A stretch of 64,000 bases of DNA from positions 211,103 to 275,102 of IMG/VR virus record IMGVR_UViG_3300048438_000153; one strand, 5' to 3'. Both the position numbers and the translations under genes were made by a program. The notes under the pieces are model-generated. The model was not told the origin of the DNA. It searched no databases and was given only the letters and a program-made list of their open reading frames with translations. Positions 1,763-54,321 of the stretch are shown here, piece after piece. Every line of letters starts with the position of its first letter. The first letter of the stretch is position 1.

Positions 1763-2881
1763 CTAGTTTCGATATTGAGCTTCCCATTTCTTTATGTCAT
1801 CTAACTCTTCTGGAGTCAGAGGTTCAGATAAGTTCAACTGATTGATTCCCTTTAAGACTTCCTTTTCTATTATAAGGGTACTAATAGTCATCAGTCTAGA
1901 TCTCATACCCTGTAAGTATTTCCTACCGACCCTAACGATCTCTGCTCTAGTCTCTTCTCCTATTTCTGAAGGAAATAGCCCTTCAAACATGGAAGGGTCT
2001 GCGCTATCCAAGTAAGTCCCCACAATGTCTCGCGCGTAACTCTTAGCTTCAGCCTTAACTCTGTCTCTTAACCGACGCGCTTTAATAGAGCCTCTCACGC
2101 TGAAGTCAACGTATTTCGCAGCCTCTTCAACCATCTCAGCAAGTTCACCATCATCCAAGACTGAAAAGGTTCTGCTTCTGATCTCCGCCTCAATATCTGA
2201 AGCTAGAGGATTGGCGCTAAAGAACTTCTTCACCCTAGCTCTTGGATGAAAACCTCTTCTTACGGGAGTCTCTGCGCTCGACCCTGAATCTTGAGCCTTT
2301 TGCCGAGATATTTCTCTCCGCCTCTCATCCCTAGACGTAACCCTCTTAGAAATGTCGGGCATCTTAGATGCTAAGTACTGAGGAAAGTATCTTCGAGCGA
2401 CCATTGGAAGCACATTTTCTTTAAGAAAGGAAGATGCTCTAGAGTAAGCAGACTCGCCCCCATTCACAGCCTCTTCGAGTACTTCACTTGCATCGACGTA
2501 TGGCGCAACAAGGCTTTTAAGTTTATCGTTTGTCGCTAGTTCTTTCATCTCATCGTAGTCGTAGAATGAGTCTAGAGCCCTAGAAATGTCCTGATTGGTA
2601 ATCTGACTCAAAAGGCGAGTGACGAGGCTATTCTTTCTGCGAATCCTCCTCGCGTTACCTCCAATGAAAGCACCTTCACCCTCAGATCTGTACTGATCTA
2701 CGAGGATCTTCTCAGACTTTCTCCATAGAGGTGTTTGAGTCACGAGATTATAGAGGATCGAAGCCATCTCCTCAGCGAGATTATCCTCAGAAAAACCAAT
2801 AGCATCGACTTTCGTGTAGTCGATATTAGAGGCGATATGGATACTCGCGACCCTACGCGCAAAAGCTCTTTTAGAAATCAT
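1763..2881 (-). CDS. Hypothetical protein, possibly virion-internal (RRVAS leader)
   Basis: Long ORF; GGAG RBS before ATG 2881; TA-N5-TTTAT motif upstream. Confidence 0.75.
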   Translation of the reverse strand: MISKRAFARRVASIHIASNIDYTKVDAIGFSEDNLAEEMASILYNLVTQTPLWRKSEKILVDQYRSEGEGAFIGGNARRIRRKNSLVTRLLSQITNQDISRALDSFYDYDEMKELATNDKLKSLVAPYVDASEVLEEAVNGGESAYSRASSFLKENVLPMVARRYFPQYLASKMPDISKRVTSRDERRREISRQKAQDSGSSAETPVRRGFHPRARVKKFFSANPLASDIEAEIRSRTFSVLDDGELAEMVEEAAKYVDFSVRGSIKARRLRDRVKAEAKSYARDIVGTYLDSADPSMFEGLFPSEIGEETRAEIVRVGRKYLQGMRSRLMTISTLIIEKEVLKGINQLNLSEPLTPEELDDIKKWEAQYRN

Positions 2882-2929
2882 TGTGATCACTCCCTAAGTG
2901 TTATTTCTTCAACTACCTGAGAGAGCGAG

Positions 2930-2941
2930 ATAAAGACTCTA
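2930..2941 (-). promoter_or_regulatory. Putative late promoter TA-N5-TTTAT (TAGAGTCTTTAT)
   Basis: One of 8 exact copies at a conserved distance upstream of start codons. Confidence 0.6.
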
Positions 2942-3919
2942 TTAAGAAACCCCTATGACCGACCAATCAAAGTCCCCAACCATCCCATTCGCCGAATAAT
3001 CTGTGACAGTACCCTCAAAGAAATTCTTCATGGAGTCTCCTGAGATGATCCAATCGAGCCAAGAAAGAGGGTTTTCTTTCTGCTTAAAGATCGGCTTCAA
3101 ACCAAGCTGAAGCAGTCTACGATCTGCCAAGTACCTGACGTATGTCTTAATGTCCTGAGAGGTCAGCTCATTAATCGTGTCGTTTGATCCGTAGACGAGA
3201 TCGACAAGCGCGTCCTCAAGCCCTACCGCTTTCGTGTAGTTCGTGTAGATGTAACTCTTGAGCTCATCTGTCACTACTTGAGGGTTCTCAGTGCAGTATG
3301 TGTGAAAGAGCTTAGTCATACCCTCAACGTGTGTCGTCTCGTCACGGATAGACCATTCAACTACCTCACACATACCCTTCATCTTTCCGAATCTCTGAAA
3401 GTTGAGGAGCATCACGAAAGCAGAAAAGAGACTCATGCCCTCGTTACACACCGAGCGCGCCATCTCGAACGCCATGTGAGCTTCATCTGAAAGACCTTTT
3501 GGAGCTTCCATCATGAACTCGATCTTCTCTCTCATAGCATCAAACTCTAAGAAAGCTGAGTATTCTTTCTCTGCAAACCCGAGAGTGTCATTCAAGAGCG
3601 CATACGCCCTTTGATGAGTACCCTCGCGGTTGGCGAAAGAAAGAAGCATATTCCTCACTTCGTTATTCTTGAAGAAAGGAATAAAGACCTCACAGTAGTT
3701 ACCACCAACTGCGACATCACTTTGAGTGAAGATTCTCAAAATCTGAGTAATGTGTTCTTTCTCAGACTTTGAGATTTCACTGCCCTTCCACTGAGAGACA
3801 TCCTCTTGGAGCTTGGCTTCCCAAGTACCCCAATGGATCTTCTCATGGTCTTCCGCAAAGGTCATCGCCCATGCGTACTGAAAGGGCTTATAAGTCTTAC
3901 TGAACTCTGTAAGAGACAT
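2942..3919 (-). CDS. nrdB: Ribonucleotide reductase class Ia beta subunit
   Basis: YKPFQYAWA, FTQSDVAV, REGTHQRAY (radical Tyr), EGMSLFSAF, WSIRDETTH, NFFE..VTDY. Confidence 0.97.
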   Translation of the reverse strand: MSLTEFSKTYKPFQYAWAMTFAEDHEKIHWGTWEAKLQEDVSQWKGSEISKSEKEHITQILRIFTQSDVAVGGNYCEVFIPFFKNNEVRNMLLSFANREGTHQRAYALLNDTLGFAEKEYSAFLEFDAMREKIEFMMEAPKGLSDEAHMAFEMARSVCNEGMSLFSAFVMLLNFQRFGKMKGMCEVVEWSIRDETTHVEGMTKLFHTYCTENPQVVTDELKSYIYTNYTKAVGLEDALVDLVYGSNDTINELTSQDIKTYVRYLADRRLLQLGLKPIFKQKENPLSWLDWIISGDSMKNFFEGTVTDYSANGMVGDFDWSVIGVS

Positions 3920-3971
3920 ATTTTATGTCCTCCTGTGTTGAAAGGGATAGCATAGTACCCTCTCGGAGAAC

Positions 3972-3983
3972 ATAAAAGAGCTA
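3972..3983 (-). promoter_or_regulatory. Putative late promoter TA-N5-TTTAT (TAGCTCTTTTAT)
   Basis: 53 nt upstream of the nrdB start. Confidence 0.5.
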
Positions 3984-4004: not shown

Positions 4005-4838
4005 TTAGAGGTAATCCCTCCGATACCTACGCCTAGCGAGCTTAACTTCCTTGTACGGAGGCTTCCACTCAATCTCACCCTCTTCCATCAGCTTTTGAGC
4101 TCTCGGCACTTCATCAGGGTTAATGACAGGCATATCAACTCGGGCGGGCGCCCAGCCTGGTACTTGCTTGTTCATCGCGCGAACATTTGCACCCATCTGC
4201 TTGATGCCTTCGTTGACAGAACCGAAGCTCTTAATGAGAATGTCCTGAACCTTCTTTGGTGAGGTGAACTCGTTACCGTTGATAGCGAGGTTCTTGATCT
4301 CGTTCATCACATTCTGATCTGTGTAACGAGTGATGTCGCCCTTACCGGGATTCCCATTTCTCGTTGGGAAAAGACCCTTTGTGATGATGTTGAGAACCTT
4401 AAGAAGTGTCTTGCCCTCAAGGTCTGCGACATAACCCCCCACCTTGACATTAGGTCCGAAAGCGATGATGGCTGCTGACCATCTGTGGTGTCCGTCCATA
4501 ATCTGACCGTCATTAGAAATGATCGCACCAAGATCAGTAGTAAGCTTTCCATCAAGCATAGCGAGAGCCATACCCACAGACTTACCGAGAACCATTGTGG
4601 TCTGAGAAGGTTTGAGGTTGCTCGCTTGAGCCTTCGTCTTTCTCACAGAAATCTTATCGCTCTTGTTATCGCCTGAATCAACCAAGTGCTTAGCGAGATC
4701 GGCATCTACGTTTGAAAGACGACCAGCGTTCTGAATCTCTCTATACACCTCTTCAGGCGCTAAGACACGAGCGGTGCGCTCCATACGAGCGACTCTTATT
4801 TCTAAATCTCTAAGGACTTCTGATGCGGTTCTTCTCAT
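4005..4838 (-). CDS. ParB/Srx-like domain protein with an RRTAS...RVAR leader
   Basis: LKPSQ and IISNDGQIMDGHHRWSA match the ParB-N/sulfiredoxin-like motif. Confidence 0.7.
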   Translation of the reverse strand: MRRTASEVLRDLEIRVARMERTARVLAPEEVYREIQNAGRLSNVDADLAKHLVDSGDNKSDKISVRKTKAQASNLKPSQTTMVLGKSVGMALAMLDGKLTTDLGAIISNDGQIMDGHHRWSAAIIAFGPNVKVGGYVADLEGKTLLKVLNIITKGLFPTRNGNPGKGDITRYTDQNVMNEIKNLAINGNEFTSPKKVQDILIKSFGSVNEGIKQMGANVRAMNKQVPGWAPARVDMPVINPDEVPRAQKLMEEGEIEWKPPYKEVKLARRRYRRDYL

Positions 4839-4887: not shown

Positions 4888-4899
4888 ATAAAGAGATTA
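4888..4899 (-). promoter_or_regulatory. Putative late promoter TA-N5-TTTAT (TAATCTCTTTAT)
   Basis: 50 nt upstream of the start at 4838. Confidence 0.6.
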
Positions 4900-9488: not shown

Positions 9489-9490
9489 TC

Positions 9491-10205: not shown

Positions 10206-13200
10206 TTACTCCTTGTCTTCAAACTCTGAGGCGGTCTGATAGTCGCCCTCGTCCATGAACTTCTCCCTGATGAGGGAGTTTCTTTCTACTGACTTAGCGA
10301 CCGAAAGCCAAGCTTCTTCAAGAATGACGTCGCTCTTTCTCATGAGGTCTGTCAGCGCGTCCCTCTCTCTCTCAGGGCTTAAGAGTTTACTGAAGCCCTT
10401 TGACTTGAGTTTGAGCTTCTCGATAGTGCCAACGTCAGTCATCGAGCGCACATTGTCGTTTGAGTAGTAGGCGATCTTAAACTCGTTAGAGTAGGTCGAA
10501 ATCGCCTCTAGTACGTCCTGTGCAGACCTTCTGCTCATGTAAGACTCCCAACATGAAGCGTCATCTACGTCGAAGGGCTCAGAGGGGCGCTTCAGGTAAT
10601 CTGAAAGACCCATCTCAAACTCGTTGCACTTCATCTTGAAATACACGTTGAGTACGCGCTGTGCTACGTCGCTATCGTTCAGAGAAAGAGACATCCTCTT
10701 GAGCGGAGTCCCATTCGCAGACCACCACCTCTGACCGATGAGCTCAGTCTTGTTATCGTCAGTACAGAGGAAGAGGTCAGACAAGCTAACCTCATTTCCG
10801 TTTCGGATGCGATCATTGTCTACGAGCCAATCTTTAATCGCGATCTCCTCCTTAGAAAGCACCTCATGATCAAGATCGAGGAAGTCAATCTGAATGTCTG
10901 AGCTGAAGCCGAGAGAAGGCAAGGTCATAAGGTCACTGCTGTCCATGTCGGCCTTGATAGAAGACACATTCTTATCTGCTCTCGCGCTCACAATCTGACC
11001 GAAGATGAGCCTCGAAGGAACGTCCGAAGGCAGACACTTAGAGAAAGAAAGAGCCTTATTGTAGATCGTCCTCGTCATGTCGAGATTTTCTTCAACGAAG
11101 ACCTCAAGGTTGATGTCCTCACTCTGAGAAAGAACATGACCCTCTTCAATGATCGCGAAGTCATCGTCTGACGTGAACTGATAAGAAACAATCGAAGAGA
11201 GCCCCGTGAGATCTGAGACTCTCCTAGCTTCAGAGGGGTCTTTTGATTCTTGAATTACAGAAGAGAACAGAGGATCTGACCTGAAGCGAGAGGGGTCGAG
11301 CGCGAGATACTTAAGTGGGTTCTCGTCCTCGTTCTCAAGGGCCTCTGAGACATCTTTGATGTTACTAGCAGAGGGGTCGAGGAGCATCGAGACAAGATTC
11401 TTATTGATCCTGATCGACTCACCTGTAGTCCTCTCAACGCTATCGTAGTCTGCGATCAGATCAGTCTCCATGCCCTTTCTGATGATGTCCATGAAGAAGT
11501 CCTGATCCGCGCCCTGAATCAAGTCTTTCATCTCATCAATGGTCATGTCCATAGCGTCTTTTCCAAAAGCAGATGCTTTGTCTGAGTCGCCATAGCCTGA
11601 AGTCCTATCGCCACCCTTAGCGATCACCGCGTCAAGGTAGATAACCTCTACTTGCTTGTTTTGACCTGTGCGGTATGCGCGCGCTGTCCTCTGCTTAACA
11701 AGCTCAGAGTCAAAACCCTCACCGCGATCAAGGTGAACCACCGTTCCGATGAACTGAAAGTTGAAGCCCTTCGCGTACTCGTCGGTGCAACTGATCGACT
11801 TGATGCTTGGGTTGTCTTTAAAGATCATCTTAGTAGCGGAAATAGCCCACTGCTCGGAAACGAAAGCGAAGACGCCATTAGGGTTGAAGTAAACTTTCTT
11901 AAGAGCGTTCCTTGAAGACTTGACCCTCTTCACATCCTTATCGGTGAGAGCCTTGAAGAGATCGTTGAAAGGAGTCTCAATAACCTCTTTCTCCTCTTCC
12001 TCAAGTACGCTGTCATACTTGTTGAGGTTGAACTCTACGAGCTCGAAAAGATCCTGAACCTCCTCCCTAAACTCTTCTCCCGCTTTTGGGTGAGCATTTA
12101 AGAAAGAATAGTCTACAAGCCTACGCTCAAGTGCAGATAAAGACGCGAACCTACGACTGTCAAGGTTGACCCTAGAAAGCTCAGTCTTCCCTGTGTCTTT
12201 CTTGATCGCGCCGATATTCTTACCCGCTCGATAGAACTCGATGGAGTCCCTACGGAGCGCGACGTGAACACCGCCAACGCCCGACTTACTGCACTTAACT
12301 GCGTTCTGTCTGACGATAGTCTGATCTGCTGAGAAATAACACACCGCCTTCCCCGGCCTGTCCATCAAGATTTTCTCAGCTTGATCGAGCTTCGGGTTAG
12401 GCACTTTCTCATTGAAATACTTTGAGGGGTTCGTGGTCAGGGTGATGAGATCCCTGATCTTGGAGACACTCTTAGCTTGAGCGAAGTCCACGATGTTCTT
12501 GAAAGAGGACTCCTGATACTTGCCCCCTTTCTTAATTACGTCTCTGTACTTCTTGACCATCGCCTTAAGCTCGCGAGCGAGTGCTCCTGAGAGCTTGCGG
12601 TACTCTTTCTCGACGCGCTCGTTGAGCCGAACTGTGATGACTTGTGAAGTGGGCTTCTGAAGCTTAGGGAGTCCGATTTCTTCAAGATTCACGTCCTGTT
12701 TGAAAGCGAAATAAGCGTTCGCCTTGACCCATGTGTTGAACTCTTCGCGAGTTCCTTTCTTAAGGCCGACGAATCGACCGCCGATGACGTTCCCGAATCT
12801 CTCAGCGAAAGCTCTTTCCTTCTCTGCTGAGAACTCCGCGCCCCTCGCGACTGCGACGAACCTGTAAAGGTCGAGTGGATCTCTCTCCATCGCAGAAGCT
12901 GTGAGAAGAATCTTACGAGGGTGCTTCAGGTCAGAGAGAGCCTTTCTCTTAGTTCCTGTGAGCGCCTCATTGACTTCATCAAAGAAACAGATCGCGTATT
13001 TGTCTTTGAAGTACTCAGTAGAGTCAGCGTAGTTGCTACCCATCTCAGGCTTAGAGGGGTCTTTCCAATAGTCTGAAGGGATATCCCTGAGCCTACGCTC
13101 CCTCTTCTTCGGGTCTTTCTCAGCGAGGAACTCCTCAACGCGGTCGATGCCTCTGACAATCTTAGCGAACTTGGTGTAGTTCATCTCGTAGATGCGGTTA

Positions 13201-15419
13201 TCTACGACGCCGTGATCAGTCATGAAGTCTTTCATTTCTCTTGAGAAGTTACCTTGCAGTCTCTTCGGAGAAACGAACAAGAATTGTTTCTCAGATCCAG
13301 GAGCTTCTTTGGTCTTCATGTAGTGGCGCATAGCACCGCCCGCCAAGAGAGTCTTACCCACACCTGTGTCGAGAGCCATTAGACCTGAGTATGCGTTCGC
13401 CTCAAGCCAAGCCATCGCCTCCATCTGCTTGTTGTTGAAACGGAAAGGACGCCCCTTAAACTCTGAGACGAATCCTCCGATAGCATCGGGAGTGAATTTC
13501 TTAAGGTTCTCTTCATTGAGAGCGCGGTCACGAGCTGTGAGCTCACGGTAGTACTCGTCAAGGTAGTCAAGAGCAGGCTTAGAAACAGCGCATGAGCCGA
13601 GCGTGTCTCTAATCGACTCGTAAGCAGATGGGTCGAAGTAATAGAAAGGGTTCAGACCGTTCACAGTGGGAGCGAGTCTAGGGTCTTTCTTCTGCTCGAT
13701 GGAAGGCTTCATAATCTTAGCAAGATCTTTGATCGCGTTGCGGTCTTGCTTGCTCGCGTTAGAGCTAGGGATGCCAAGAACGAGTCTCTTCTTGTTCGCA
13801 GAAAGAGTGATATAGGGCTCTCTTAAGCGGTTATTCACGACCTTCATGTACTTGGCGCGCGCAGAGCCTTCGCCAAGATCAAGGAAGCTAACCTCTTCAC
13901 CGTCAGGTACGAGATCGCCTACCTCATTTCTTACAAAGTCACCCTCGATCATCTCGATCTTCTGAGTTTCTCCATCTGCGGTGCGCGTGTAGAAGCTACC
14001 CTCGATGAGACGGCCTGAAGCATTGACGAGATCTTCTAAGAGAAAGCCTTTATATTGACCCTCAACGATCACGTCAACCATCGTGTCGCCAACGATCATC
14101 TTCTTAACTTTAACTACACGAGTCAGCGCCCTCTTTGAACTACCCTTCGCATCTGTGAGCTGAGCTGTCCTCATATCCCCTGAAAGAGCGGAGACGTCAT
14201 AGCGAGTGAGAGGGAAACTCTCTTCAGCGCCCTCATAGGTAATCTTAGAAAGGTACTCATAGACAGGAGTCTCCTGAAAGACATCCTCGCCCTCATATCC
14301 CTTTGGCTGACGCTTCTTTACTTTCTTAACGCCGACCTGAATACGCTCTTCTTCGATTGTAGGCATCTGATTGAAGAGAGCCATTTCCTTTCCGATTCGG
14401 CTCTCGAACGCCTCCTCGTAATCATCTTTCGAGGAGAACATCTGATAGTCTGAAGTCTCCTCATCCACCAAGTATGGAGAGTAGATTCCCTTGATGAAGG
14501 GCTCAAGCCTCTCCTCATAGGCTTTCATCGCCTTCTCGTACCCACTCGCCTCTACGCGCGCCTCATATGACTCCCGCGACTCTCCTCTTCTCTTAGATGG
14601 TCTGCGAGGTGGCTTACCTAGTGACTTTACTTGAGGGTCATAAGCGACTGTAGCAGTCTTAGCGCCACCGACGCCGAGGTAGTCTCTAGTCTTTCCTACG
14701 ACAAAACCCTGTTGCTCAAGTGTCGTCTCAAGCTCTTTCTGCTGAATGTCGAAAGCTCTCTTAAGAACATCATATTCCTCAGTATCATCTTTCGAGGACT
14801 TGTTGAGCGCGCTCTCAAGGCTTGAGGGAAGAGCGAACTGAATATAGGGGAGATTGACGGAGCTGTTTCTTTTCTGCTTCGTAGACACCTCAATCCCCAT
14901 CAGTTTGAAGACACGTCCAAGGAGATCAGAGTAATTCTCAACAAGGCGGTTCTTGTAGGTCGCTTTTCTGACATACTTTCTGATGCGCCTGATGCGGTCA
15001 TCTACAGGAGTGTTGATCTCTGAGGTTTCACGGATGAATTTCTCGAAGTCCTCGATCTCAGCTCTCATTCTCTGAGTGTCTTGGATGAAAGACTCCGACA
15101 TCTCGCTTGCGAACTTTCTACGGAGGTACTTAGTACCCTCATCGAACTTATCCACGAGAAGGATATTGTAGTTCTTAAACCTGTCGGCTTTCGCCAAGAT
15201 TTTAAGCATGAACTCGTTAGGCGTGATGAGGTGAGTATATACCGTAAAGAGCGCGTCGATCTCTTTGCGACGAACGGCGATAAACACTCGATCCTCAAGA
15301 CCTTTTTCCTTTCTCTCTAAGATTTCCTCCTCAGAGAGCTTACGCCTCTTACCATAACGCCTCTTAACAACATCTGTAAGGCGACCCCTAAAAGGGATGA
15401 CTGTCTGCCTGTTCTTCAT
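10206..15419 (-). CDS. Giant SNF2/SF2 helicase-domain protein, probably virion-associated
   Basis: ALDTGVGKT (I), FFDEVNE (II), LLTAS (III), AKGFNFQ (V), QRTARAYRTGQ (VI); long N- and C-terminal extensions. Confidence 0.85.
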   Translation of the reverse strand: MKNRQTVIPFRGRLTDVVKRRYGKRRKLSEEEILERKEKGLEDRVFIAVRRKEIDALFTVYTHLITPNEFMLKILAKADRFKNYNILLVDKFDEGTKYLRRKFASEMSESFIQDTQRMRAEIEDFEKFIRETSEINTPVDDRIRRIRKYVRKATYKNRLVENYSDLLGRVFKLMGIEVSTKQKRNSSVNLPYIQFALPSSLESALNKSSKDDTEEYDVLKRAFDIQQKELETTLEQQGFVVGKTRDYLGVGGAKTATVAYDPQVKSLGKPPRRPSKRRGESRESYEARVEASGYEKAMKAYEERLEPFIKGIYSPYLVDEETSDYQMFSSKDDYEEAFESRIGKEMALFNQMPTIEEERIQVGVKKVKKRQPKGYEGEDVFQETPVYEYLSKITYEGAEESFPLTRYDVSALSGDMRTAQLTDAKGSSKRALTRVVKVKKMIVGDTMVDVIVEGQYKGFLLEDLVNASGRLIEGSFYTRTADGETQKIEMIEGDFVRNEVGDLVPDGEEVSFLDLGEGSARAKYMKVVNNRLREPYITLSANKKRLVLGIPSSNASKQDRNAIKDLAKIMKPSIEQKKDPRLAPTVNGLNPFYYFDPSAYESIRDTLGSCAVSKPALDYLDEYYRELTARDRALNEENLKKFTPDAIGGFVSEFKGRPFRFNNKQMEAMAWLEANAYSGLMALDTGVGKTLLAGGAMRHYMKTKEAPGSEKQFLFVSPKRLQGNFSREMKDFMTDHGVVDNRIYEMNYTKFAKIVRGIDRVEEFLAEKDPKKRERRLRDIPSDYWKDPSKPEMGSNYADSTEYFKDKYAICFFDEVNEALTGTKRKALSDLKHPRKILLTASAMERDPLDLYRFVAVARGAEFSAEKERAFAERFGNVIGGRFVGLKKGTREEFNTWVKANAYFAFKQDVNLEEIGLPKLQKPTSQVITVRLNERVEKEYRKLSGALARELKAMVKKYRDVIKKGGKYQESSFKNIVDFAQAKSVSKIRDLITLTTNPSKYFNEKVPNPKLDQAEKILMDRPGKAVCYFSADQTIVRQNAVKCSKSGVGGVHVALRRDSIEFYRAGKNIGAIKKDTGKTELSRVNLDSRRFASLSALERRLVDYSFLNAHPKAGEEFREEVQDLFELVEFNLNKYDSVLEEEEKEVIETPFNDLFKALTDKDVKRVKSSRNALKKVYFNPNGVFAFVSEQWAISATKMIFKDNPSIKSISCTDEYAKGFNFQFIGTVVHLDRGEGFDSELVKQRTARAYRTGQNKQVEVIYLDAVIAKGGDRTSGYGDSDKASAFGKDAMDMTIDEMKDLIQGADQDFFMDIIRKGMETDLIADYDSVERTTGESIRINKNLVSMLLDPSASNIKDVSEALENEDENPLKYLALDPSRFRSDPLFSSVIQESKDPSEARRVSDLTGLSSIVSYQFTSDDDFAIIEEGHVLSQSEDINLEVFVEENLDMTRTIYNKALSFSKCLPSDVPSRLIFGQIVSARADKNVSSIKADMDSSDLMTLPSLGFSSDIQIDFLDLDHEVLSKEEIAIKDWLVDNDRIRNGNEVSLSDLFLCTDDNKTELIGQRWWSANGTPLKRMSLSLNDSDVAQRVLNVYFKMKCNEFEMGLSDYLKRPSEPFDVDDASCWESYMSRRSAQDVLEAISTYSNEFKIAYYSNDNVRSMTDVGTIEKLKLKSKGFSKLLSPERERDALTDLMRKSDVILEEAWLSVAKSVERNSLIREKFMDEGDYQTASEFEDKE

Positions 15420-21369: not shown

Positions 21370-21418
21370 TTCTTGTTCTCCTAGAAAGATGGGAGGGTTC
21401 TCTATTCTTACGTTTTAT

Positions 21419-47702: not shown

Positions 47703-50700
47703 TCAGTAGAGGCTGAGCGCCTCGTCGATCTCTGCGTCAGTCATATCGTCATCCTCGATGGTGACATCCTCTGAAAGAATCTCAAGGGCTGTCGCGAGCT
47801 TCGTTGAACCCGTCTTAGAGCCACAATCAAGACCCATCTTCCCGATGAACTCTGAAGGCTCAAGCTCCTCTCCCTTTTCATTCTGCTCGTAAGAAAGAAC
47901 CGTGACGCTCTTCATACCGCGAGTGACTGCGACGTAGGCGAGCTTCTGCTCTTGTTCTGCTTTATCAGCCTGAGCCTGAGCTTCGTTAGCGTGGATGATA
48001 GGGTCGAAATCCACTTTGTCTGAGGGGAACTTGCCTTCGATCATCGGGACGTAAAGGTTCGGAACTTCAAGACCCTTCCAACCGTGAACGGTGTCGAGGA
48101 CAACAGCATCCTCATCGCTCTTGGCGAACCCTCTCTTAGCCTTGCTCTTCATGACCTTAATCTTATCAAGAGCTTCTTGGACGCTCTCATGCTTATTGAA
48201 GAGAGATCGCAGAGAAGGGAGAGGAGCAAGGTTGTACTCTTCAGGGTCGCCTTGACTGTCGCCTTCAGATTCGACGCTCGGCTCAATTTCACCGCCTCCG
48301 TCAGAAACCATCTTGCTAAGGTACTCCGTGTCAGAAGCCTTCACCTTTGAAGCGAGGATTTCATGGAGTTTCTTTCCATTAGGTCCTTCTACATAGAAGT
48401 CTTCGTCTCCCTCATAGATGGGCTTATATCCGAGAGCGATGTCGAAAGCCTCTTTAGGTCTAGCCGTACCCTCACCACCCCAATGAGCAAGCATCTCCAA
48501 ATACTTAAAAATCTCGTTCTTCTTCTTATCTTTAGAATCAATGCCAAGAGCTTCTAAAAGGGTGTAGAAGTTATCTTCTTGACCCTCGTCAACTTGATCC
48601 ATGATATGATCAGGCAGATCTTCAACTTTTACTTTAAAAGAGTCAGCCACTTTTCCGAGCGTCTTTCCGTTGAAAGAGCTTGGGAAGTCGTACCCGAAAT
48701 CTCTCCATGAGTTGAAGAGAGCACTCATTCTGAGAGAAACGTCTGAGCTTGACGCGCCCATTACTCTGATGATTGACTTTGTAGAGGTGTGGTTGAAGGG
48801 ATCTACGCCTGATACGAAAGGGATGTCTTGCTCAAGTAAAGCGAGGGCGTATGGGATGACCTCAGCGTTGGTTCGGCAAGCGATACCGAAATCGCTAGGT
48901 GTGCTCGTCTGAACACTACTAGTGATAGCTGTCTTAATGTCTGAAGCGAGGCTACGAGCAGACTCATTCGCGTTCTTCTTTCTTTCGTGCTTAATAGAGT
49001 CTTGACTACCCTTGAAAGAAGCGACGCAAGAAAGCCCTAGACCCTTACTCGCGAGTCGGTTGGCTGCGCTGACAATGTTCTCACCTGAGCGGAAGTTAAG
49101 CCCGATAGACATAAGATCGAAAGAGCCTTGATTAGTCTTAGACTTACTCGTGAACTCTTGTGAGGTCGCGCCTCGGAAGCCGTAGATACTCTGATTCTCA
49201 TCGCCGATGAGAGTGAAGCTCGTACCCTGAGTCGCTACAGGGGCTTTCACAGGAACAGGCTTAGAGTTAGAACCCTTAGCTGAGTATGTTCCCGCAATCA
49301 TGCCGAAGAAAGCGTGCTGGACAAGGTTCAAGTCTTGAGCTTCGTCAACAATGATGTGCTTGTATTGAGCGCGGATCTCATCAAGGTTTTTCTTATAAGA
49401 AAGAAGCCTCGTAGCTTTGATCAGAACATCGTCGAAGTCCATTCGGTCGTCAATGTTTAAGAGATGCTGATAAGCACCATAGACTCTCGCTTGCATCTCA
49501 AAGAGATCACCCTTACCTGAGACTTTTACCCAAGCCTCAGAAGGGGATAGCATACGCGCCTTACATTTAGTAATGAAGAGCTGACATTTCTTAGCTGAAG
49601 GGATCTTAATCTCAGCCCCTTGACTTCCCATCCCCATGATGCCCCACCAAGCAGACTCAGTAGATGCTTTCTTTCCTTTCTTCTCCACTGCACTAGGGAA
49701 AGAATAAGAGTCGATTTTCTCTTGGTTTCCGCCGAAAGCTCTCGCCAAGATTTTCTCGCCTCTCGACGTTTTCAAGATAGAGTCAATGAGGCTGACGTTC
49801 TCGGTAGTTACGCTCCCTACTCCGTTTTTCTTATAGCTCTCTCTAATACCCAAGACGACAGAAGACACGTTTTCTTTCTCGTATCCTTTCTCCTCACGCC
49901 AATTCTCAACGGTGTAGATCATAGAAAGAACACGGATGTCGTCTCTTTCTGCACTCGCACTCATTGGAGTCATCTTCTCAGACCAAAAGCTATCACTCTT
50001 AGGTCTTGAGCCTGAATTGGGCGTGTCTTTCGCGAGCTTAACTGCTCTCTGTACGAAAGAAAGAAGATCGTACTCATCAACTATTTTCTTAACTCCCGCA
50101 GAAGGGTCAAAGCGGTTGATAAACTCAATCGCAATTGAGTGAGTGGTGCGCCCAATCGTAGTGTACTCAATGTTCTTGAGTGATCTACCTACGGCGTCCT
50201 CGATCTTTTTCTTAAGGTCACTAGCAGACTTCCTAGAGAAAGAACAAGCAAGGATAGAGTAAGGGTCTGCTCCCTTGTCTTTGATGAGGTGAGCTACCTT
50301 ACCTGAGAGAACACGGGTCTTACCTGATCCCGCGCCCGCAGAAATGATAGTCATCCCGTCAGAAAGCATCGCGTCCTCTTGCTCTCTCGTAAGACCTAGA
50401 TCGCCACCGATATCAGTTTTATGCTCAGCGTCTGTGACGAGAACCTTAGCCTCATTCAAGACCTTGATAACCTCTACGATAGAGCTATCTAGATTGCCCT
50501 CAGTCTGCGCCTCTTCGATAAGGTTGTTCTGCTCTCTAAGAATCTCGGGGAGAGAAGCTCCGCTTTCCCTATTCTCTTTGAGAGACTTAAGTAGACCCCG
50601 AACCTCGGCAGATTCGCTCGCAGTCTTCGCAGGAGAGCCATACGCTTCGGCTACTTTCTGCATGGACTTGATTAAGGCTTTAGACCTTCCATCGGGAGGA

Positions 50701-51353
50701 GTCTTAGTGCTGACGTTAACGATATCTGTTAAAGTTGGCGCATCGGTCAATGAGCGAAGCTCTTTCACCCTAGCGTTGTCGAAAACGTCTTTGACCTCTT
50801 GAAGATCAGTGTTTTTAATCTTATTGAGCGTCACATGAGTTGCCCTCGCAGCGTATGCGATTTCTCTCACATTGTTCAGATTTCCTCTGACGGTCTTGAG
50901 GAGGCGACTGATCTGTGTTCTCGCGCTGTTGTTACTAATGGCGCTGATGAGGTCTCTTTGAACATCGAAAAACACGTTGTGCTGTACGTCGAGCTTCTTA
51001 ATGCTATCTTGAAGATCAGAAACCGCCTCAGAAAGAGATGGGTCAGGGTTGTTGTGTGAAGCAACAATCGCATCGTAGTAAACTTTAAGAGACTTGACGA
51101 TAAGCACCATTCTCTTCTGCTGATTCTGATCAACTTTGGTAGGCTTGGGCATACTCTTGAGAGATTTGATCTGAGCCTTGTTCAGACCAACCTCTAATCT
51201 AAGAGTGTTTTCGCCTGTGACACCTTTCTCAAGGAGAGCGTATGCCGACTCGATTGAGTCAATCATGCGGTATTCAATGGCATCTTCGATCAACCTAATG
51301 GCGGTTATGTAGTTTTCGCGGTTCGTAGCCGCTTCTTTCTTAAGATTGGACAT
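47703..51353 (-). CDS. UvrD/PcrA-like SF1A helicase with a ~310-aa N-terminal extension
   Basis: SAGAGSGKT, TTHS, VDEAQD, IGDENQSIYGFRGA, NFRS, RTN, TVHGWKGLE, AYVAVTRG. Confidence 0.92.
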   Translation of the reverse strand: MSNLKKEAATNRENYITAIRLIEDAIEYRMIDSIESAYALLEKGVTGENTLRLEVGLNKAQIKSLKSMPKPTKVDQNQQKRMVLIVKSLKVYYDAIVASHNNPDPSLSEAVSDLQDSIKKLDVQHNVFFDVQRDLISAISNNSARTQISRLLKTVRGNLNNVREIAYAARATHVTLNKIKNTDLQEVKDVFDNARVKELRSLTDAPTLTDIVNVSTKTPPDGRSKALIKSMQKVAEAYGSPAKTASESAEVRGLLKSLKENRESGASLPEILREQNNLIEEAQTEGNLDSSIVEVIKVLNEAKVLVTDAEHKTDIGGDLGLTREQEDAMLSDGMTIISAGAGSGKTRVLSGKVAHLIKDKGADPYSILACSFSRKSASDLKKKIEDAVGRSLKNIEYTTIGRTTHSIAIEFINRFDPSAGVKKIVDEYDLLSFVQRAVKLAKDTPNSGSRPKSDSFWSEKMTPMSASAERDDIRVLSMIYTVENWREEKGYEKENVSSVVLGIRESYKKNGVGSVTTENVSLIDSILKTSRGEKILARAFGGNQEKIDSYSFPSAVEKKGKKASTESAWWGIMGMGSQGAEIKIPSAKKCQLFITKCKARMLSPSEAWVKVSGKGDLFEMQARVYGAYQHLLNIDDRMDFDDVLIKATRLLSYKKNLDEIRAQYKHIIVDEAQDLNLVQHAFFGMIAGTYSAKGSNSKPVPVKAPVATQGTSFTLIGDENQSIYGFRGATSQEFTSKSKTNQGSFDLMSIGLNFRSGENIVSAANRLASKGLGLSCVASFKGSQDSIKHERKKNANESARSLASDIKTAITSSVQTSTPSDFGIACRTNAEVIPYALALLEQDIPFVSGVDPFNHTSTKSIIRVMGASSSDVSLRMSALFNSWRDFGYDFPSSFNGKTLGKVADSFKVKVEDLPDHIMDQVDEGQEDNFYTLLEALGIDSKDKKKNEIFKYLEMLAHWGGEGTARPKEAFDIALGYKPIYEGDEDFYVEGPNGKKLHEILASKVKASDTEYLSKMVSDGGGEIEPSVESEGDSQGDPEEYNLAPLPSLRSLFNKHESVQEALDKIKVMKSKAKRGFAKSDEDAVVLDTVHGWKGLEVPNLYVPMIEGKFPSDKVDFDPIIHANEAQAQADKAEQEQKLAYVAVTRGMKSVTVLSYEQNEKGEELEPSEFIGKMGLDCGSKTGSTKLATALEILSEDVTIEDDDMTDAEIDEALSLY

Positions 51354-52290: not shown

Positions 52291-52691
52291 CCTCATCTTT
52301 AGAGGAAGTCTTAGTCTTACAAGTGGAAGAAAGAAACTTTCTCGTGTCCTGTAAGAAAAGAGCTTTTCCTCTAAGCCCGTATGAAATCTATGGGGTAATC
52401 TTAGACGTGAACGCGCCCGAGACAGAAGATGTGGGTCATGTTCAGTTGAGCGTGGGGGAAACAAAAAAAGCCCACACCACTTTCCGAAAAAGTGGTGTGG
52501 GCTTATTTCGTTTTGGGGCTAGAGCCTCTTGGACTGTTGACGTAGGTGGGGCTGAGCTTAATATCAGAGGCTTTGTCTTAAGGGACAACCCCTACCTCAC
52601 GCTACTCTCGGAGCTAGGGGTGAGTAAGCCCGAGAGAACGTGGGTTGTCCCTACACACCTATTAGAACCCTGTCTTAATGTTGACGACTAG
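52260..52691 (+). CDS. Hypothetical protein
   Basis: 143-aa ORF. Confidence 0.55.
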   Translation: MAIKVGQRLLTSSLEEVLVLQVEERNFLVSCKKRAFPLSPYEIYGVILDVNAPETEDVGHVQLSVGETKKAHTTFRKSGVGLFRFGARASWTVDVGGAELNIRGFVLRDNPYLTLLSELGVSKPERTWVVPTHLLEPCLNVDD

Positions 52692-53607
52692 GCTCGTAGA
52701 GACAAGGAATCAGGCGGTCGGTGAAGTAGCTCACAGCTTGGTAAAACTGCTCCTCGCTCATAGGGATTCCACGCGGAGAACCTGCAATACCCTGATGGCC
52801 TCCTGCCTCATCTCCCCAAAGCTCTTGAACAATTTCTCTACATGAGAAACCCTCAATGGGTTCGGCGAGACTTACAGAGATTGATCTCCATTTCTCATTG
52901 TAAGTGACAACTGCGATACCTCTTACTCCATCAGGGTCAGAGTATAAGTGGTTGCAGAAGTCTCCATCAGGCGATCTTCGGATCACCACCGAGAGGGGTG
53001 TCATGTACTGAAAGGTCTTAAGATTCAGATCTCGCTCACCCTGAACAAACCCTAAACCCTTTTCATAGTTGCTTCCCTCAAAGGGAGAAGAAAGGGCGTC
53101 AGAAATGTAGTTAGAAATAGAACTGACGAAAGAACTGACCTCAAGGTTGTGGTCTTTAGGGAACTGAGGGCGTGTGTCCTTGATTTCTTTCTGAATGCCC
53201 ATCAAGCAGAAATAGTAAGGGTCTTTCTCATCGAGAGAGTGTACTCCATCAACATCGCATTTCTCAGCCAAGTCCCAAAAATCACTGTGATCAGAGAAAG
53301 ACGAGTTGTAGAGACCTGTCGCTCTCATCAGACCGCCGATAGTGTCGAGGTCGAGGTGGGAAATCAAAGCGACCTCATCGTCCGAGAGAACAGGAATATT
53401 CTTATCATTACAGGGCGCGGGTCGGCCTTCGGGGTGGAGGTGTCTCCCCACATAGTCTGAACCCACAGGCTGATGGTGGGCAGCGGTATAGCGAGTTCCC
53501 TCGCACACGAACGCGCCGTACTCAGCTTCTACAGTCAAAGAGGGAGGTTTATCGAGGCTCAGGGTGTCTGATGCGAGTTGAGCAGTGGGTGAGAGAATGA
53601 CGATCAT
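52675..53607 (-). CDS. DHH/DHHA1-like hydrolase-fold hypothetical protein
   Basis: AAHH, SHLDLDT, GGH.GIAGSPR. Confidence 0.55.
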   Translation of the reverse strand: MIVILSPTAQLASDTLSLDKPPSLTVEAEYGAFVCEGTRYTAAHHQPVGSDYVGRHLHPEGRPAPCNDKNIPVLSDDEVALISHLDLDTIGGLMRATGLYNSSFSDHSDFWDLAEKCDVDGVHSLDEKDPYYFCLMGIQKEIKDTRPQFPKDHNLEVSSFVSSISNYISDALSSPFEGSNYEKGLGFVQGERDLNLKTFQYMTPLSVVIRRSPDGDFCNHLYSDPDGVRGIAVVTYNEKWRSISVSLAEPIEGFSCREIVQELWGDEAGGHQGIAGSPRGIPMSEEQFYQAVSYFTDRLIPCLYEPSRQH

Positions 53608-53667
53608 TATTCAATAACCTTTCTATAAAATCGGTGGGTTAGTCTTATATCGTAAAAGGAGTTTCGC

Positions 53668-54321
53668 ATGAACAGAAATCAAATGATAAGAATCGCTCAT
53701 CAAAACCCCCACATGAGGGAGCAGGTTCTTCGTATTATTCAAGCTACAGACAGAGTTGCATCAGCGATAGATCGAGCTGAAGGGCTTCTTATGAAAGAAG
53801 CATCCAAGGGGTTACCGATCTCTAAGCTTTTAAGATATGCTCAGTCAGGTATCTTCATCGTCTCAGCTTACCGCAATCAGTTCTCACGCAAGCAGAACAA
53901 AGAAAGAAACGAAGAGCTCAGGCAGATGATTCTTTCTCTCGGCGTCCCTGTCAGTAAGATTGTTAAGCTCAAGTCTCAATGGCTTGAGGAAAACTCGGAC
54001 GTACCGACTCAGGAGCAGAGCTTTGCAATCCTCGCCCCTGTCTCATGGGCAGACGCGCTCAGAATCTCAAACCACTTCGAGCAAGACGGCTTCATTTGGT
54101 CTAGCTCAACAAACCCTCTCGCTATGTATGAGCAGACAGGGAAAGTCACTTTCGCTGTAGATAAAGATATGGCAACTCAGATTAGTCTGAGCAGTGCGAA
54201 AGACCTCTATTCTAGAGGTCGAGGTGGCTCTTTCGACATCGGCTTCAATTGGAACAACCCTCTTGATTGGAATCGCACAAGCCCTATCAAGACCTCAGAC
54301 ATCTTGGCGGTTGCTAGTTAA
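53668..54321 (+). CDS. DUF3293-like protein with an IRIAHQNP leader
   Basis: IVSAYR..QNKERNEEL..W.E..EQSF..FEQDGFIW; near-consensus late motif at 53639-53650. Confidence 0.6.
   Translation: MNRNQMIRIAHQNPHMREQVLRIIQATDRVASAIDRAEGLLMKEASKGLPISKLLRYAQSGIFIVSAYRNQFSRKQNKERNEELRQMILSLGVPVSKIVKLKSQWLEENSDVPTQEQSFAILAPVSWADALRISNHFEQDGFIWSSSTNPLAMYEQTGKVTFAVDKDMATQISLSSAKDLYSRGRGGSFDIGFNWNNPLDWNRTSPIKTSDILAVAS

What the first reader, a model, noticed from the sequence alone, without database searches (positions are those of the whole stretch)
1763..54321. Candidate head-packaged enzyme system: late-motif genes share basic K/R-x-A leader peptides on a ParB-like protein, UvrD, SNF2 and a DUF3293-like protein
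Seen: unrelated proteins share short basic-helix/Ala motifs at their termini or domain joins. These are RRVASIHIAS (1763-2881), MRRTAS..EIRVARMERTAR and C-terminal KLARRRY (ParB-like), KKVADKWL (28258-28506), KKEAA/KTAS/KKAS/KLAT (UvrD), IRIAHQNP..RVAS..KEAS (DUF3293-like) and RRFAS (SNF2). Almost all of these genes have their own TA-N5-TTTAT motif, as the tail-fibre genes do, while replication genes such as recA and holB have extended -10 sites instead. Established: T4 and phiKZ head proteins carry leaders cleaved by the prohead protease, and P1 packages the helicase/MTase DarB. Inference: these are capsid-targeting or cleavage signals marking DNA-handling enzymes that are injected with the genome (anti-defence or genome establishment).
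Basis: partly seen in the sequence, partly recalled or inferred. Interest (0 to 1): 0.75.

Follow-up and report, generated by a model that had tools for sequence, protein, structure and literature searches.

The report
Shared leader peptides on phage proteins

Summary
The window is the last 64 kb of a 275-kb seawater jumbo-phage contig of the phage G lineage. All quoted peptide strings exist, and TA-N5-TTTAT is a real promoter-like motif.

Real:
- [KR]-x-A-S occurs 142 times genome-wide against 56 in shuffles. It is concentrated sevenfold in the head module just upstream of the window (scaffold-like, ejection-like and maturation-protease proteins). It is conserved at orthologous sites and enriched in three related genomes.
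- About 22 proteins carry one of three recurrent N-terminal leader types.
- Homologues of the window's ParB/Srx-like protein in other phages carry any of four leader types, or none, so the leaders are swappable modules.
- Leader genes are ten times likelier to have their own TA-N5-TTTAT.

Window members: 4005-4838, 1763-2881 and 53668-54321 (SAM-lyase-like).

Not supported: the UvrD, SNF2 and 28258 sites are at chance density and not conserved in orthologues.

Best reading: a T4-CTS-like capsid-targeting and propeptide system with a herpesvirus-like Ala|Ser cleavage site. This is inferred, not shown. No virion proteomics exists for this phage, and my structure tests gave no answer. Cultured relatives (phage G, Tunturi_5) make it testable.

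The parts
4005..4838 (-). ParB/Srx-fold protein (277 aa) lying between nrdA and nrdB. It carries the type-A N-terminal leader.
   Evidence: Invariant DGHHRW motif. AF2 pLDDT 94, with top Foldseek hits all ParB-N, Noc, KorB or Srx at E about 0.03. 201 homologues, whose N-termini carry four different leader types or none.
4779..4838 (-). Type-A leader, codons 1-20 (MRRTASEVLRDLEIRVARME). [KR]xAS sits at residues 3-6, followed by an amphipathic helix.
   Evidence: Shared by 11-14 otherwise unrelated proteins of this genome. Amino-acid identity is 0.71 in the leader against 0.06 in the next 20 residues. Invariant residues carry only synonymous codon changes. Predicted helix at residues 5-21.
4888..4899 (-). 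TA-N5-TTTAT promoter-like motif, 50 nt upstream of the ParB-like gene
1763..2881 (-). Protein of unknown function (372 aa, start at the ATG at 2881) with the class-2 terminal motif at its N-terminus
   Evidence: No Pfam, PHROG or NCBIfam hit. The first ~60 residues are nearly invariant in homologues that are 46-60% identical overall.
2828..2881 (-). N-terminal 18 codons holding the class-2 motif [KR][VI]A[SN]x[YH][LIM] (here RVASIHI)
   Evidence: Motif seen 10 times against 0.12 in shuffles. Eight of the ten copies lie within 10 residues of an N- or C-terminus. The motif is also present in G001-G003.
2930..2941 (-). TA-N5-TTTAT motif, 49 nt upstream of 1763-2881
53668..54321 (+). S-adenosylmethionine-lyase-family protein (217 aa) with a class-3 N-terminal leader
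   Evidence: PF23780 at 30.6 bits, matching residues 64-158. All 9 homologues keep the leader.
53668..53805 (+). Class-3 leader (residues 1-46). It holds an MIRIAHQNPHMR-type helix, then a conserved [KR]-E-[AS]-[ASG] junction just before the enzyme domain.
   Evidence: Class-3 motif seen 5 times against 0.03 expected in this genome. The same leader type precedes the ParB-like cargo in other phages. The junction is conserved, but RVAS at residue 29 is not.
47703..51353 (-). UvrD-family helicase (1216 aa). It is NOT part of the system. It has its own TA-N5-TTTAT at 51405-51416.
   Evidence: Pfam. 4 [KR]xAS sites against 1.3 expected, p = 0.045 uncorrected. None is conserved in the G002 or G003 orthologues.
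10206..15419 (-). SNF2-family protein (1737 aa). It is NOT part of the system. It has its own TA-N5-TTTAT at 15477-15488.
   Evidence: Pfam. 2 [KR]xAS sites (4 counting Ser or Thr) against about 1.2 by composition. RRFAS lies in a non-conserved insertion.
28258..28506 (-). It is NOT part of the system.
   Evidence: Orthologues are 65-85 aa long. KKVAD is replaced by KAVVD or KDLVK in them. There is no promoter motif of its own.
15955..26929 (-). Two tail-fibre genes (15955-21369 and 21431-26929). The first has TA-N5-TTTAT at 21419-21430.
   Evidence: PHROG tail and tail-fibre hits. 336-nt tandem repeats. [KR]xAS is at chance density.
3972..3983 (-). TA-N5-TTTAT upstream of nrdB (2942-3919). 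This shows that the motif is not restricted to virion or leader genes.

Best explanation
The phage is a marine jumbo phage of the phage G lineage.

Proposed mechanism.
- Its head-maturation protease most likely recognises and cuts [KR]-x-Ala|Ser. The gene lies about 23 kb upstream of the window.
- Multiple such sites let it dismantle the scaffold-like and ejection-like head proteins and process itself.
- About 22 small, fast-evolving accessory proteins carry one of three interchangeable N-terminal leader peptides that contain this motif or are followed by it.
- Type A is MRRTAS plus an amphipathic helix ending RIARLE. Class 2 is RVASxYL at a terminus. Class 3 is a LIRIAYxNPxLR helix.
- The leaders most likely act like the T4 capsid-targeting sequence. 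They bring the cargo into the assembling prohead, where the protease trims it. The cargo is then packaged with the DNA and can be delivered into the next cell.

Window members.
- The cargoes are the ParB/Srx-like protein (4005-4838), the unknown protein 1763-2881 and the SAM-lyase-like protein (53668-54321).
- Most leader genes are transcribed from their own TA-N5-TTTAT promoter, the class that also drives the capsid operon and a tail-fibre gene.
- UvrD, SNF2 and the 28258 protein are ordinary genes that happen to contain the tetrapeptide.

Shown: motif statistics, conservation, modularity and promoter association.
Inferred: cleavage, targeting, packaging and injection.
For: Motif excess.
- [KR]xAS occurs 142 times against 55.7 +/- 6.5 in shuffles.
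- AS is the dipeptide with the highest K/R frequency at position -2 among all dipeptides tested, 23% against 12% background.

Localisation.
- Density per 100 aa is 0.50 in the head module. It is 0.063 in the tail block, 0.048-0.074 in the window's replication and fibre genes, and 0.069 by chance.
- The Bonferroni-significant carriers are the scaffold-like protein (9 sites), the 866-aa protein (10), the protease (5) and two small head-module proteins.
- The protease is identified by phrog_18299 at E = 1.6e-15, by homology to annotated maturation proteases, and by its position next to the scaffold-like and major capsid genes.

Conservation.
- Protease sites: RVAS at residue 25 in 25 of 27 sequences; a K-x-A-[SFG] site directly after the catalytic domain inside a hypervariable linker; residue 393 in 17 of 27.
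- Scaffold sites at 112, 622 and 645 are kept in 10 of 10 sequences. The 1133-aa protein keeps its C-terminal KVASxY[LM] in 7 of 7 despite 28% overall identity.
- The same excess, z = 10-13.6, appears in three related genomes, including one of 31% GC. The same three orthologous groups are the top carriers there.
- In cultured Tunturi_5 the motif is nearly confined to the 'DNA ejection protein', the protease and the protein after it.
- In phage G the protease has two K-x-A-S sites after its catalytic domain.

Leaders.
- The type-A family has 11-14 members and is under protein-level purifying selection.
- Consensus sequences are genome-specific: G003 has MRTASEVLRSLEARIARLE and G002 has MISQKLASLEARIAKLE.
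- Many leaders are followed by a second [KR]xAS.

Modularity.
- Homologues of the ParB-like cargo carry type A, class 2, class 3, a fourth leader type, or none.
- The SAM-lyase homologues all keep a class-3 leader plus a [KR]E[AS][ASG] junction.

Promoter link. 13 of 22 leader genes have their own TA-N5-TTTAT, against 28 of 227 other genes (p = 1.8e-6). The motif also precedes the capsid operon and a tail fibre.

Precedents. T4 CTS and internal proteins, and SPN3US propeptides (PMC5694885, PMC10052503). Phage G particle proteomics reported many nucleic-acid enzymes (PMC12484599).
Against: - There is no proteomic or biochemical evidence for cleavage or packaging in this phage or its relatives.
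- The complex prediction of protease with leader gave no answer. The protease model was too poor for a fold comparison (pLDDT 45).
- In most type-A leaders the clear [KR]xAS lies at residues 3-6. A cut there would remove only four or five residues and leave the helix. A second site after the helix is present in only some members; the window's ParB-like protein has RTAR there.
- The SAM-lyase gene lacks the TA-N5-TTTAT motif.
- The timing of that promoter is unknown, and nrdB, UvrD and SNF2 have it too.
- The major capsid protein has no site.
- Phage G shows only weak genome-wide enrichment, z = 2.8-4.4.
- A ClpP-like gene exists and could be the relevant protease instead.
Confidence: 0.5

Rival explanations
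1. [KR]xAS is the head-protease site, but the N-terminal leaders are something else. On this view they are anchoring or oligomerisation helices that attach variable proteins to another late structure, such as capsid-surface decoration, the neck, the baseplate or fibres. They would not be signals for internal packaging.
For: - Type-A leaders are amphipathic, heptad-like helices.
- They are co-expressed from the same promoter class as fibre and capsid genes.
- In most members a cut at residues 3-6 would leave the helix on the mature protein.
Against: - The cargoes include intracellular enzymes (ParB/Srx-like, SAM-lyase-like, a WGR-domain protein), which have no obvious role on a virion surface.
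- Class-2 motifs occur at either terminus.
- Four unrelated leader types substitute for one another on the same cargo.
Confidence: 0.15
2. The terminal motifs are degrons or recognition tags for a protease or chaperone. Candidates are the phage's ClpP-like protein or host AAA+ proteases. The tags would give timed turnover of accessory proteins rather than capsid targeting.
For: - Placement at either the N- or the C-terminus is typical of AAA+ degrons (my knowledge).
- The genome encodes a ClpP-like protein next to a leader gene.
- Phage G carries ClpP and ClpX (PMC12484599).
Against: - No ClpX homologue was found in this 88%-complete contig.
- The motif is concentrated in the scaffold, ejection and protease proteins of the head module. 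It sits right after the head protease's catalytic domain. Both point to the maturation protease.
Confidence: 0.1
3. UvrD, SNF2, the ParB-like protein and the DUF3293-like protein together form a head-packaged DNA-handling enzyme set that is marked by K/R-x-A signals at termini and domain joins.
For: - UvrD and SNF2 have their own TA-N5-TTTAT.
- UvrD has 4 [KR]xAS sites against 1.3 expected, p = 0.045 uncorrected.
- P1 packages DarB (my knowledge).
- Phage G particle proteomics lists many nucleic-acid enzymes.
Against: - None of the quoted UvrD or SNF2 sites is conserved in orthologues.
- Their densities are at chance after correction.
- Neither protein has a recurrent leader.
- nrdB has the same promoter.
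Confidence: 0.07
4. No function. The shared N-termini would be by-products of duplication or gene conversion of promoter-plus-5'-end cassettes of inserted accessory genes. The tetrapeptide excess would be compositional.
For: - The first 21 nt of many type-A leaders are nearly identical at the DNA level.
- Leader genes are scattered, accessory and mostly without orthologues.
Against: - Invariant residues carry only synonymous changes: 31-41 pairwise synonymous against 0 non-synonymous at A5, L12, R15 and E20.
- The family persists with a genome-specific consensus in a 31%-GC relative.
- Expectations based on each protein's own composition fail by a factor of about ten.
- Different leader types replace one another on one cargo family.
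Confidence: 0.05
5. [KR]-x-A-S marks phosphorylation sites of a basophilic Ser kinase (R-x-x-S type).
For: The spacing of the basic residue and the Ser resembles R-x-x-S kinase motifs (my knowledge).
Against: - No Pkinase-family gene was found in the genome.
- The strict Ala at position -1, and replacement of Ser by Gly or Phe at the conserved protease site, fit a protease site rather than a phospho-acceptor.
Confidence: 0.03

Closest known systems
T4 capsid-targeting sequence (CTS) and internal proteins IPI-III and Alt, cut by prohead protease gp21
   Same: - A short N-terminal leader is shared by otherwise unrelated, fast-evolving accessory proteins.
- A protease site lies at or after the leader.
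- The same protease degrades the scaffold at many sites.
- The cargo is injected to counter host defence (my knowledge; PMC5694885, PMC9026906).
   Different: - The sequences are unrelated. T4 has a leader of about 10 aa ending in L/I-x-Glu. Here the leaders are 8-45 aa and built on [KR]-x-Ala-Ser.
- At least three leader types coexist in one genome and are swapped between lineages.
- The phage lineage differs (phage G-like, with a capsid protein that is not cleaved).
- Nothing has been shown experimentally here.
phiKZ, 201phi2-1 and SPN3US head propeptides, cut by gp175 or gp245
   Same: - These are jumbo phages.
- Many head and ejection proteins carry N-terminal propeptides with several protease motifs.
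- The protease processes itself (PMC10052503, PMC7411985).
   Different: - The motif there is S/A/G-x-Glu.
- No shared leader family is described there.
- Those phages are chimalliviruses unrelated to this lineage.
Herpesvirus assemblin maturation (M) and release (R) sites
   Same: - The scissile pair is Ala|Ser.
- One site lies directly after the protease domain, and one lies a short distance from the C-terminus of scaffold-type proteins.
- Phage prohead proteases share the assemblin fold (Cheng et al. 2004, cited in PMC10052503; site details from my knowledge).
   Different: - P3 is basic here, whereas herpesviruses have V/L/I-x-A|S.
- The fold of this protease could not be verified.
Encapsulin cargo-loading peptides
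   Same: A short peptide at either terminus of diverse cargo enzymes directs them to the interior of an HK97-fold shell (my knowledge). The class-2 motif here likewise occurs at the N- or the C-terminus.
   Different: Encapsulin cargo-loading peptides are not cleaved and have a different consensus. No binding to the capsid protein has been shown here.
P1 Dar system (DarB helicase/methyltransferase packaged in the head)
   Same: It is the precedent for a large DNA enzyme being packaged and injected (PMC9024508; my knowledge).
   Different: Packaging there depends on partner proteins, not on a shared leader. The helicases in this window show no leader or conserved site.

Membership tests
Prohead (head-maturation) protease substrates with a defined cleavage motif | Motif over-represented in scaffold or internal head proteins and in the protease itself, and rare in tail and replication proteins | tested here: met
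   relatives
Prohead (head-maturation) protease substrates with a defined cleavage motif | Sites conserved in position across orthologues while the flanks diverge | tested here: met
   Some sites turn over while the density is kept.
Prohead (head-maturation) protease substrates with a defined cleavage motif | Observed cleavage (new N-termini in virion proteins) | not testable with these tools
   No proteomics for this phage. The supplements of the phage G paper are not held.
Capsid-targeting leader (T4 CTS type) | The same short N-terminal peptide on several unrelated proteins | tested here: met
Capsid-targeting leader (T4 CTS type) | The leader is a transferable module, independent of the cargo | tested here: met
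   One cargo family is found with four leader types or none.
Capsid-targeting leader (T4 CTS type) | A protease site lies at the leader-cargo junction | tested here: inconclusive
   Present in several type-A members, in G003, and at the SAM-lyase junction. Degenerate (RTAR) in the window's ParB-like protein.
Capsid-targeting leader (T4 CTS type) | The leader is necessary and sufficient for incorporation into proheads | not testable with these tools
   The complex prediction gave no answer.
HK97/T4/herpesvirus-type serine prohead protease (clan SH) | Sequence membership in a maturation-protease family, and gene position between the portal/terminase side and the scaffold/capsid side | tested here: met
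   phrog_18299 at E = 1.6e-15. tblastn matches to annotated maturation proteases. Gene order.
HK97/T4/herpesvirus-type serine prohead protease (clan SH) | Assemblin-like fold with catalytic His and Ser | tested here: inconclusive
   AF2 model pLDDT 45. No PDB or Pfam hit. Invariant His and Ser residues exist, but the catalytic residues could not be assigned.
ParB/Srx-fold (ParB-like nuclease domain) proteins, for 4005-4838 | DGxHR-type motif and ParB N-domain fold | tested here: met
   DGHHRW is invariant. Foldseek top 20 hits are all ParB, Noc, KorB or Srx, but E is only about 0.03 and TM 0.25-0.37. No Pfam hit.
S-adenosylmethionine lyase family, for 53668-54321 | Pfam PF23780 above the gathering score | tested here: met
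   30.6 bits against a cut-off of 28. Homologues are pre-annotated with PF23780.
Late promoter class | Conserved motif at a fixed distance upstream of structural genes | tested here: met
Late promoter class | Late timing of transcription | not testable with these tools
   Only low-depth metatranscriptome contigs are available.

The most novel reading that the evidence does not exclude
Phage G-lineage megaphages use a modular 'address label' system. Several interchangeable short terminal peptides, co-evolving within each genome, would load dozens of fast-evolving accessory enzymes into the capsid. These include a ParB/Srx-type nuclease, a SAM lyase and a WGR-domain protein. A maturation protease with herpesvirus-like Ala|Ser specificity would process them, and they would be injected as a pre-made counter-defence or establishment kit.
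Probability: 0.35. Interest if true: 0.8.

Novelty: new variant of a known kind. Interest (0 to 1): 0.62.

Why it matters
- If the reading is right, sequence alone can list the packaged, co-injected proteins of an uncultured and globally distributed marine megaphage lineage. The list would include a candidate injected SAM lyase (anti-restriction) and a ParB/Srx-type nuclease.
- It would define a new prohead-protease specificity ([KR]-x-Ala|Ser) that echoes herpesvirus assemblin.
- It would provide portable leader peptides that could be used to load foreign proteins into large capsids, as the T4 CTS is used.
- Phage G and Tunturi_5 are cultured, so the prediction can be tested directly.
The helicases are not marked.

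Tried and rejected
- Complex prediction of the protease (residues 26-292) with leader residues 1-40: no answer, so it counts neither way.
- AF2 model of the protease from an 18-sequence alignment: pLDDT 45, catalytic domain unusable, so no fold search was run.
- Profile search of the protease against PDB sequences: nothing relevant.
- Pfam, PHROGs and NCBIfam on leader proteins and on homologues with other leader types: no model covers any leader. Most cargoes are unknown.
- Literature searches for a described leader or cleavage motif in phage G-like or huge phages: none found. The library is limited, and González et al. 2020 is not held.
- Supplements of the phage G multi-omics paper: not held.
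- Metatranscriptome contigs: 100% identical pieces cover parts of 1763-2881 and 4005-4838. Depth is about 2-3, they have no strand information and no defined ends, so they give neither transcription start sites nor timing.
- Sigma-70 -35/-10 scan of 28.0-47.8 kb: fewer hits than in shuffles and none with TG.
- Phosphorylation idea: no kinase gene.
- ClpX: none found.
- KKAS at the start of ORF 39390: it lies upstream of the true start at about 39453, judged from orthologues.
- The candidate 'capsid' protein at window -55330 (385 aa): dropped. The real major capsid protein is the 292-aa protein at -28108.

Full report
Context. The window is G000:C1:211103-275102, the last 64 kb of a 275,102-bp IMG/VR contig that is 88% complete. 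The sequence occurs in many seawater metagenomes. I fetched the whole contig and called 249 genes with a simple codon-bias and RBS caller. The 292-aa major capsid protein lies at window coordinates -28108 to -27230, upstream of the window. It is 88.6% identical to a protein of a 485-kb uncultured huge phage, 47% to Tunturiibacter phage Tunturi_5 and 38% to Bacillus phage G gp27. The phage therefore belongs to the phage G lineage. No tRNA gene lies in the window.

Checking the observation. All quoted strings are present. UvrD is 47703-51353(-) and SNF2 is 10206-15419(-). The 'DUF3293-like' gene, 53668-54321(+), is better called S-AdoMet-lyase family. The 'ParB-like' gene, 4005-4838(-), sits between nrdA (4908-6632) and nrdB (2942-3919). 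It has no Pfam hit, but DGHHRW is invariant in 57 homologues. An AF2 model with pLDDT 94 has only ParB-N, Noc, KorB or Srx structures among its top Foldseek hits, with weak scores. That label stands as a fold assignment.

The promoter motif. TA-N5-TTTAT has 67 hits, and 46 of them lie in the 8.7% of the genome that is non-coding, typically 35-58 nt upstream of a start codon. There is no -35 element, and the extended consensus is aTA(g/a)-N4-TTTAT. In the window it precedes 1763-2881, nrdB, the ParB-like gene, SNF2, tail fibre 15955-21369, 27236, 30897 and UvrD. It does not precede 28258 or the SAM-lyase gene. Elsewhere it precedes the capsid operon and other head genes. It is also found upstream of leader genes in relatives G003 (9 of 12) and G002 (5 of 10).

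A second element, GATAT[AG]AG, lies 36-44 nt upstream of recA, 29540, 42446 and 52675. A standard -35/-10 scan is depleted in this region.

Is K/R-x-A more than chance? Within the six named proteins taken alone, mostly not. Genome-wide the answer was unexpected. [KR]xA[ST] occurs 170 times against 85 in shuffles, and [KR]xAS occurs 142 times against 55.7 +/- 6.5. RVAS, RTAS, KKAS and KTAS dominate. Among all dipeptides tested, AS has the highest K/R frequency two residues upstream.

The excess is localised. Density per 100 aa is 0.50 in the head module (-32 to -2.5 kb), 0.063 in the giant tail-protein block, 0.074 in the window's fibres plus SNF2, 0.048 in the window's replication block, and 0.069 expected from composition. 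Five proteins pass Bonferroni correction against their own composition:
- a very acidic, Met/Ala/Glu-repeat scaffold-like protein (669 aa, 9 sites);
- an 866-aa protein (10 sites);
- the 472-aa head-maturation protease (5 sites; phrog_18299, E = 1.6e-15);
- two small head-module proteins.

UvrD reaches only p = 0.045 uncorrected, and SNF2 is not enriched.

Comparative evidence. The protease retrieved 41 related viral contigs. In their alignments, RVAS at protease residue 25 is kept in 25 of 27 sequences. A K-x-A-[S/F/G] site directly after the catalytic domain survives inside an otherwise hypervariable, gap-rich linker. A third site at residue 393 is kept in 17 of 27. Scaffold sites 112, 622 and 645 are kept in 10 of 10. 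The 1133-aa protein next to the protease keeps a C-terminal KVASxY[LM] in 7 of 7 sequences at 28% overall identity. The capsid protein has no site.

I fetched three near-complete relatives: G001 (296 kb), G002 (316 kb, only 31% GC) and G003 (290 kb). All show the same excess, z = 10 to 13.6, and the same three orthologous groups are the top carriers. In the 866-aa family some sites are conserved and others turn over while the number per protein stays at 8-10. In cultured Tunturi_5 the motif is almost confined to the annotated 'DNA ejection protein' (6 sites), the protease (1 site, C-terminal) and the following hypothetical protein (4 sites). Fourteen other head and tail proteins have none. In phage G the protease gp19 has KVAS and KIAS after its catalytic domain, and gp7, gp4 and the portal carry several sites. 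Genome-wide enrichment there is weak.

The most economical reading is that [KR]-x-Ala-Ser is the maturation protease's recognition or cleavage site. The Ala|Ser pair and the site placed right after the protease domain recall the herpesvirus assemblin R and M sites (my knowledge). The fold relationship between phage and herpesvirus proteases is cited in PMC10052503.

Leaders. Listing every site showed that many proteins begin with the motif. A BLAST of all N-terminal 45-mers against the proteome gave one large family, with consensus MRRTASEILSDLEIRIARLE. It is found on 11 proteins, plus 2-3 weaker members, and similarity ends after about 20-25 residues. The window's ParB-like protein is a member.

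Leader identity averages 0.71 against 0.06 for the next 20 residues. The invariant positions A5, L12, R15 and E20 carry 31-41 pairwise synonymous differences and no non-synonymous ones. The peptide, not the DNA, is therefore conserved.

Relatives have the family with their own consensus. G003 has MRTASEVLRSLEARIARLE on at least 12 proteins, often followed at once by a second [KR]xAS. G002 has MISQKLASLEARIAKLE on 10-11 proteins. G001 has 1-2. This pattern is concerted, genome-specific evolution, as expected for peptides that share one partner.

Two further terminal motifs recur.
- Class 2, [KR][VI]A[SN]x[YH][LIM], occurs 10 times against 0.12 expected. Eight copies lie within 10 residues of an N- or C-terminus. 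It is also present at termini in G001-G003, and it includes the N-terminus of window gene 1763-2881.
- Class 3, a LIRIAYxNPxLR helix, occurs 5-6 times against 0.03 expected. It includes the N-terminus of the window's SAM-lyase-like protein.

The modularity test. The ParB-like protein has more than 200 homologues in aquatic phage contigs. Their conserved core starts at the same point, but the N-termini differ:
- 17 of 120 carry type A;
- others carry class 2 (for example MNRRRMAVRVASMYM);
- many carry class 3 (LIRLAHxNPELRxxLLPLL, then RVAK and the core);
- many carry a fourth type (LIRLASxLPxGSxERR);
- many carry none.

All nine SAM-lyase homologues keep the class-3 leader and a [KR]-E-[AS]-[ASG] junction just before the enzyme domain. 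The RVAS at residue 29 is not conserved. The first 60 residues of the 1763 protein are nearly invariant in homologues that are 46-60% identical overall.

Cargo proteins are mostly orphan and unannotated. One has a WGR domain.

Leader genes are strongly linked to their own TA-N5-TTTAT: 13 of 22 against 28 of 227, odds ratio 10, p = 1.8e-6. For any N-terminal [KR]xAS the figures are 12 of 41 against 16 of 208, p = 4e-4.

Phage G has an analogous but different leader, MKRLIKKS, on at least 10 proteins. One of them is gp17, inside its head module.

What fails. In the orthologues of UvrD (G002, G003) and SNF2 (G003, G002 paralogues), none of the quoted sites is conserved, and RRFAS lies in an insertion. 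KKVADKWL of the 28258 protein becomes KAVVD or KDLVK in orthologues, which also show that the protein is only about 82 aa long. Neither helicase has a recurrent N-terminus. nrdB carries the same promoter motif, so the motif does not imply a virion protein.

Mechanism and its limits. By analogy with the T4 CTS and internal proteins and with SPN3US and phiKZ propeptides (PMC5694885, PMC10052503, PMC7411985), I propose that the leaders bring accessory proteins into the prohead and that the protease cuts at [KR]-x-A|S. Four caveats apply.
- Nothing here shows cleavage or packaging.
- A cut at residues 3-6 would leave the type-A helix attached unless a second site follows.
- The SAM-lyase gene lacks the promoter motif.
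- A ClpP-like gene exists, although no ClpX or kinase gene was found.

My structural attempts gave nothing usable. A phage G study reports that 55% of 69 nucleic-acid-metabolism ORFs were detected in particle proteomics (PMC12484599). This makes packaged enzymes plausible in the lineage, but those particles were only gradient-purified.

I found no prior description of these leaders or of this cleavage motif in the searchable literature.

Verdict. The real feature is larger than the finding, because it is genome-wide and lineage-wide. It is centred outside the window, in the head module. It includes only three of the six named window genes. I rate it a new variant of a known kind, a CTS/propeptide-type system.

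Noticed in passing
L015:13473-16607 (window -17629 to -14495): A 1044-aa head-module protein contains an intein with a LAGLIDADG homing-endonuclease domain (Pfam PF14890 and PF14528). By position it is probably the large terminase.
   Followed up: no
window 2942-6632: The leader-bearing ParB/Srx-like gene, with its own promoter, sits between nrdA and nrdB. This is the same slot where T4 carries the free-standing homing endonuclease mobE (my knowledge). A mobile-element role for this gene is not excluded.
   Followed up: partly
G003 loci L098-L112, e.g. upstream of the genes at G003:149811 and 224581: Leader genes of relative G003 share a conserved 5'-UTR hairpin between the TTTAT motif and the start codon. 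Its 3' arm contains the GGAG ribosome-binding site, which suggests translational control.
   Followed up: no
L113 (G000:C1:90839-91321; window about -120263 to -119781): A ClpP-family protease gene (PF00574, E = 1e-29) lies directly upstream of a type-A leader gene. No ClpX was found in the contig.
   Followed up: partly
Bacillus phage G, NC_023719.1 (L115-L139): At least 10 phage G proteins with unrelated bodies start with MKRLIKKS-like peptides. They include gp17, which lies between the portal and the protease. This is an analogous leader family in a cultured megaphage.
   Followed up: partly
P0059 and window -23006 to -19605 (L015:8096-11497): The C-terminal module of about 110 aa of the 1133-aa head-module protein follows an RLAT|S site. 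It reappears as the N-terminal part of a ParB-like homologue (P0059), so it may be a further kind of targeting module.
   Followed up: no
window 37967, 30886, 42403, 53644: A second promoter-like element, GATAT[AG]AG, lies 36-44 nt upstream of recA, a clamp-loader-like gene, 42446 and 52675. Sigma-70-type -35/-10 pairs are depleted in this region.
   Followed up: partly
window 16994-20789 and 22071-23262: The two tail-fibre genes contain 336-nt (112-aa) and 186- or 471-nt tandem repeats. These create the periodic antisense ORFs seen in the ORF list.
   Followed up: no
window 39390-40583 and 28258-28632: The longest-ORF starts are too far upstream. Orthologues place the starts near 39453 and 28506.
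   Followed up: yes
window 63432-63561: Short 33- and 39-nt tandem repeats near the contig end, in a gene-poor stretch with strong negative GC skew. This may be a genome terminus or an assembly end.
   Followed up: no
window -5663 to -4809 and -3024 to -2482 (L016): Two small head-module proteins are packed with [KR]xAS sites (5 in 284 aa, 4 in 180 aa). One has an internal repeat, [KR][KR]AS followed by FYDDEIIDDIGL. They are candidate internal head proteins.
   Followed up: partly
window 1-1701 (gene -386 to 1701): A RecD/Dda-like helicase (PHROG exonuclease V, E = 3e-105) spans the window start. An amidase/endolysin lies at 32363-33313, and an HTH (sigma region-4-like) protein lies at 31923-32375.
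   Followed up: no
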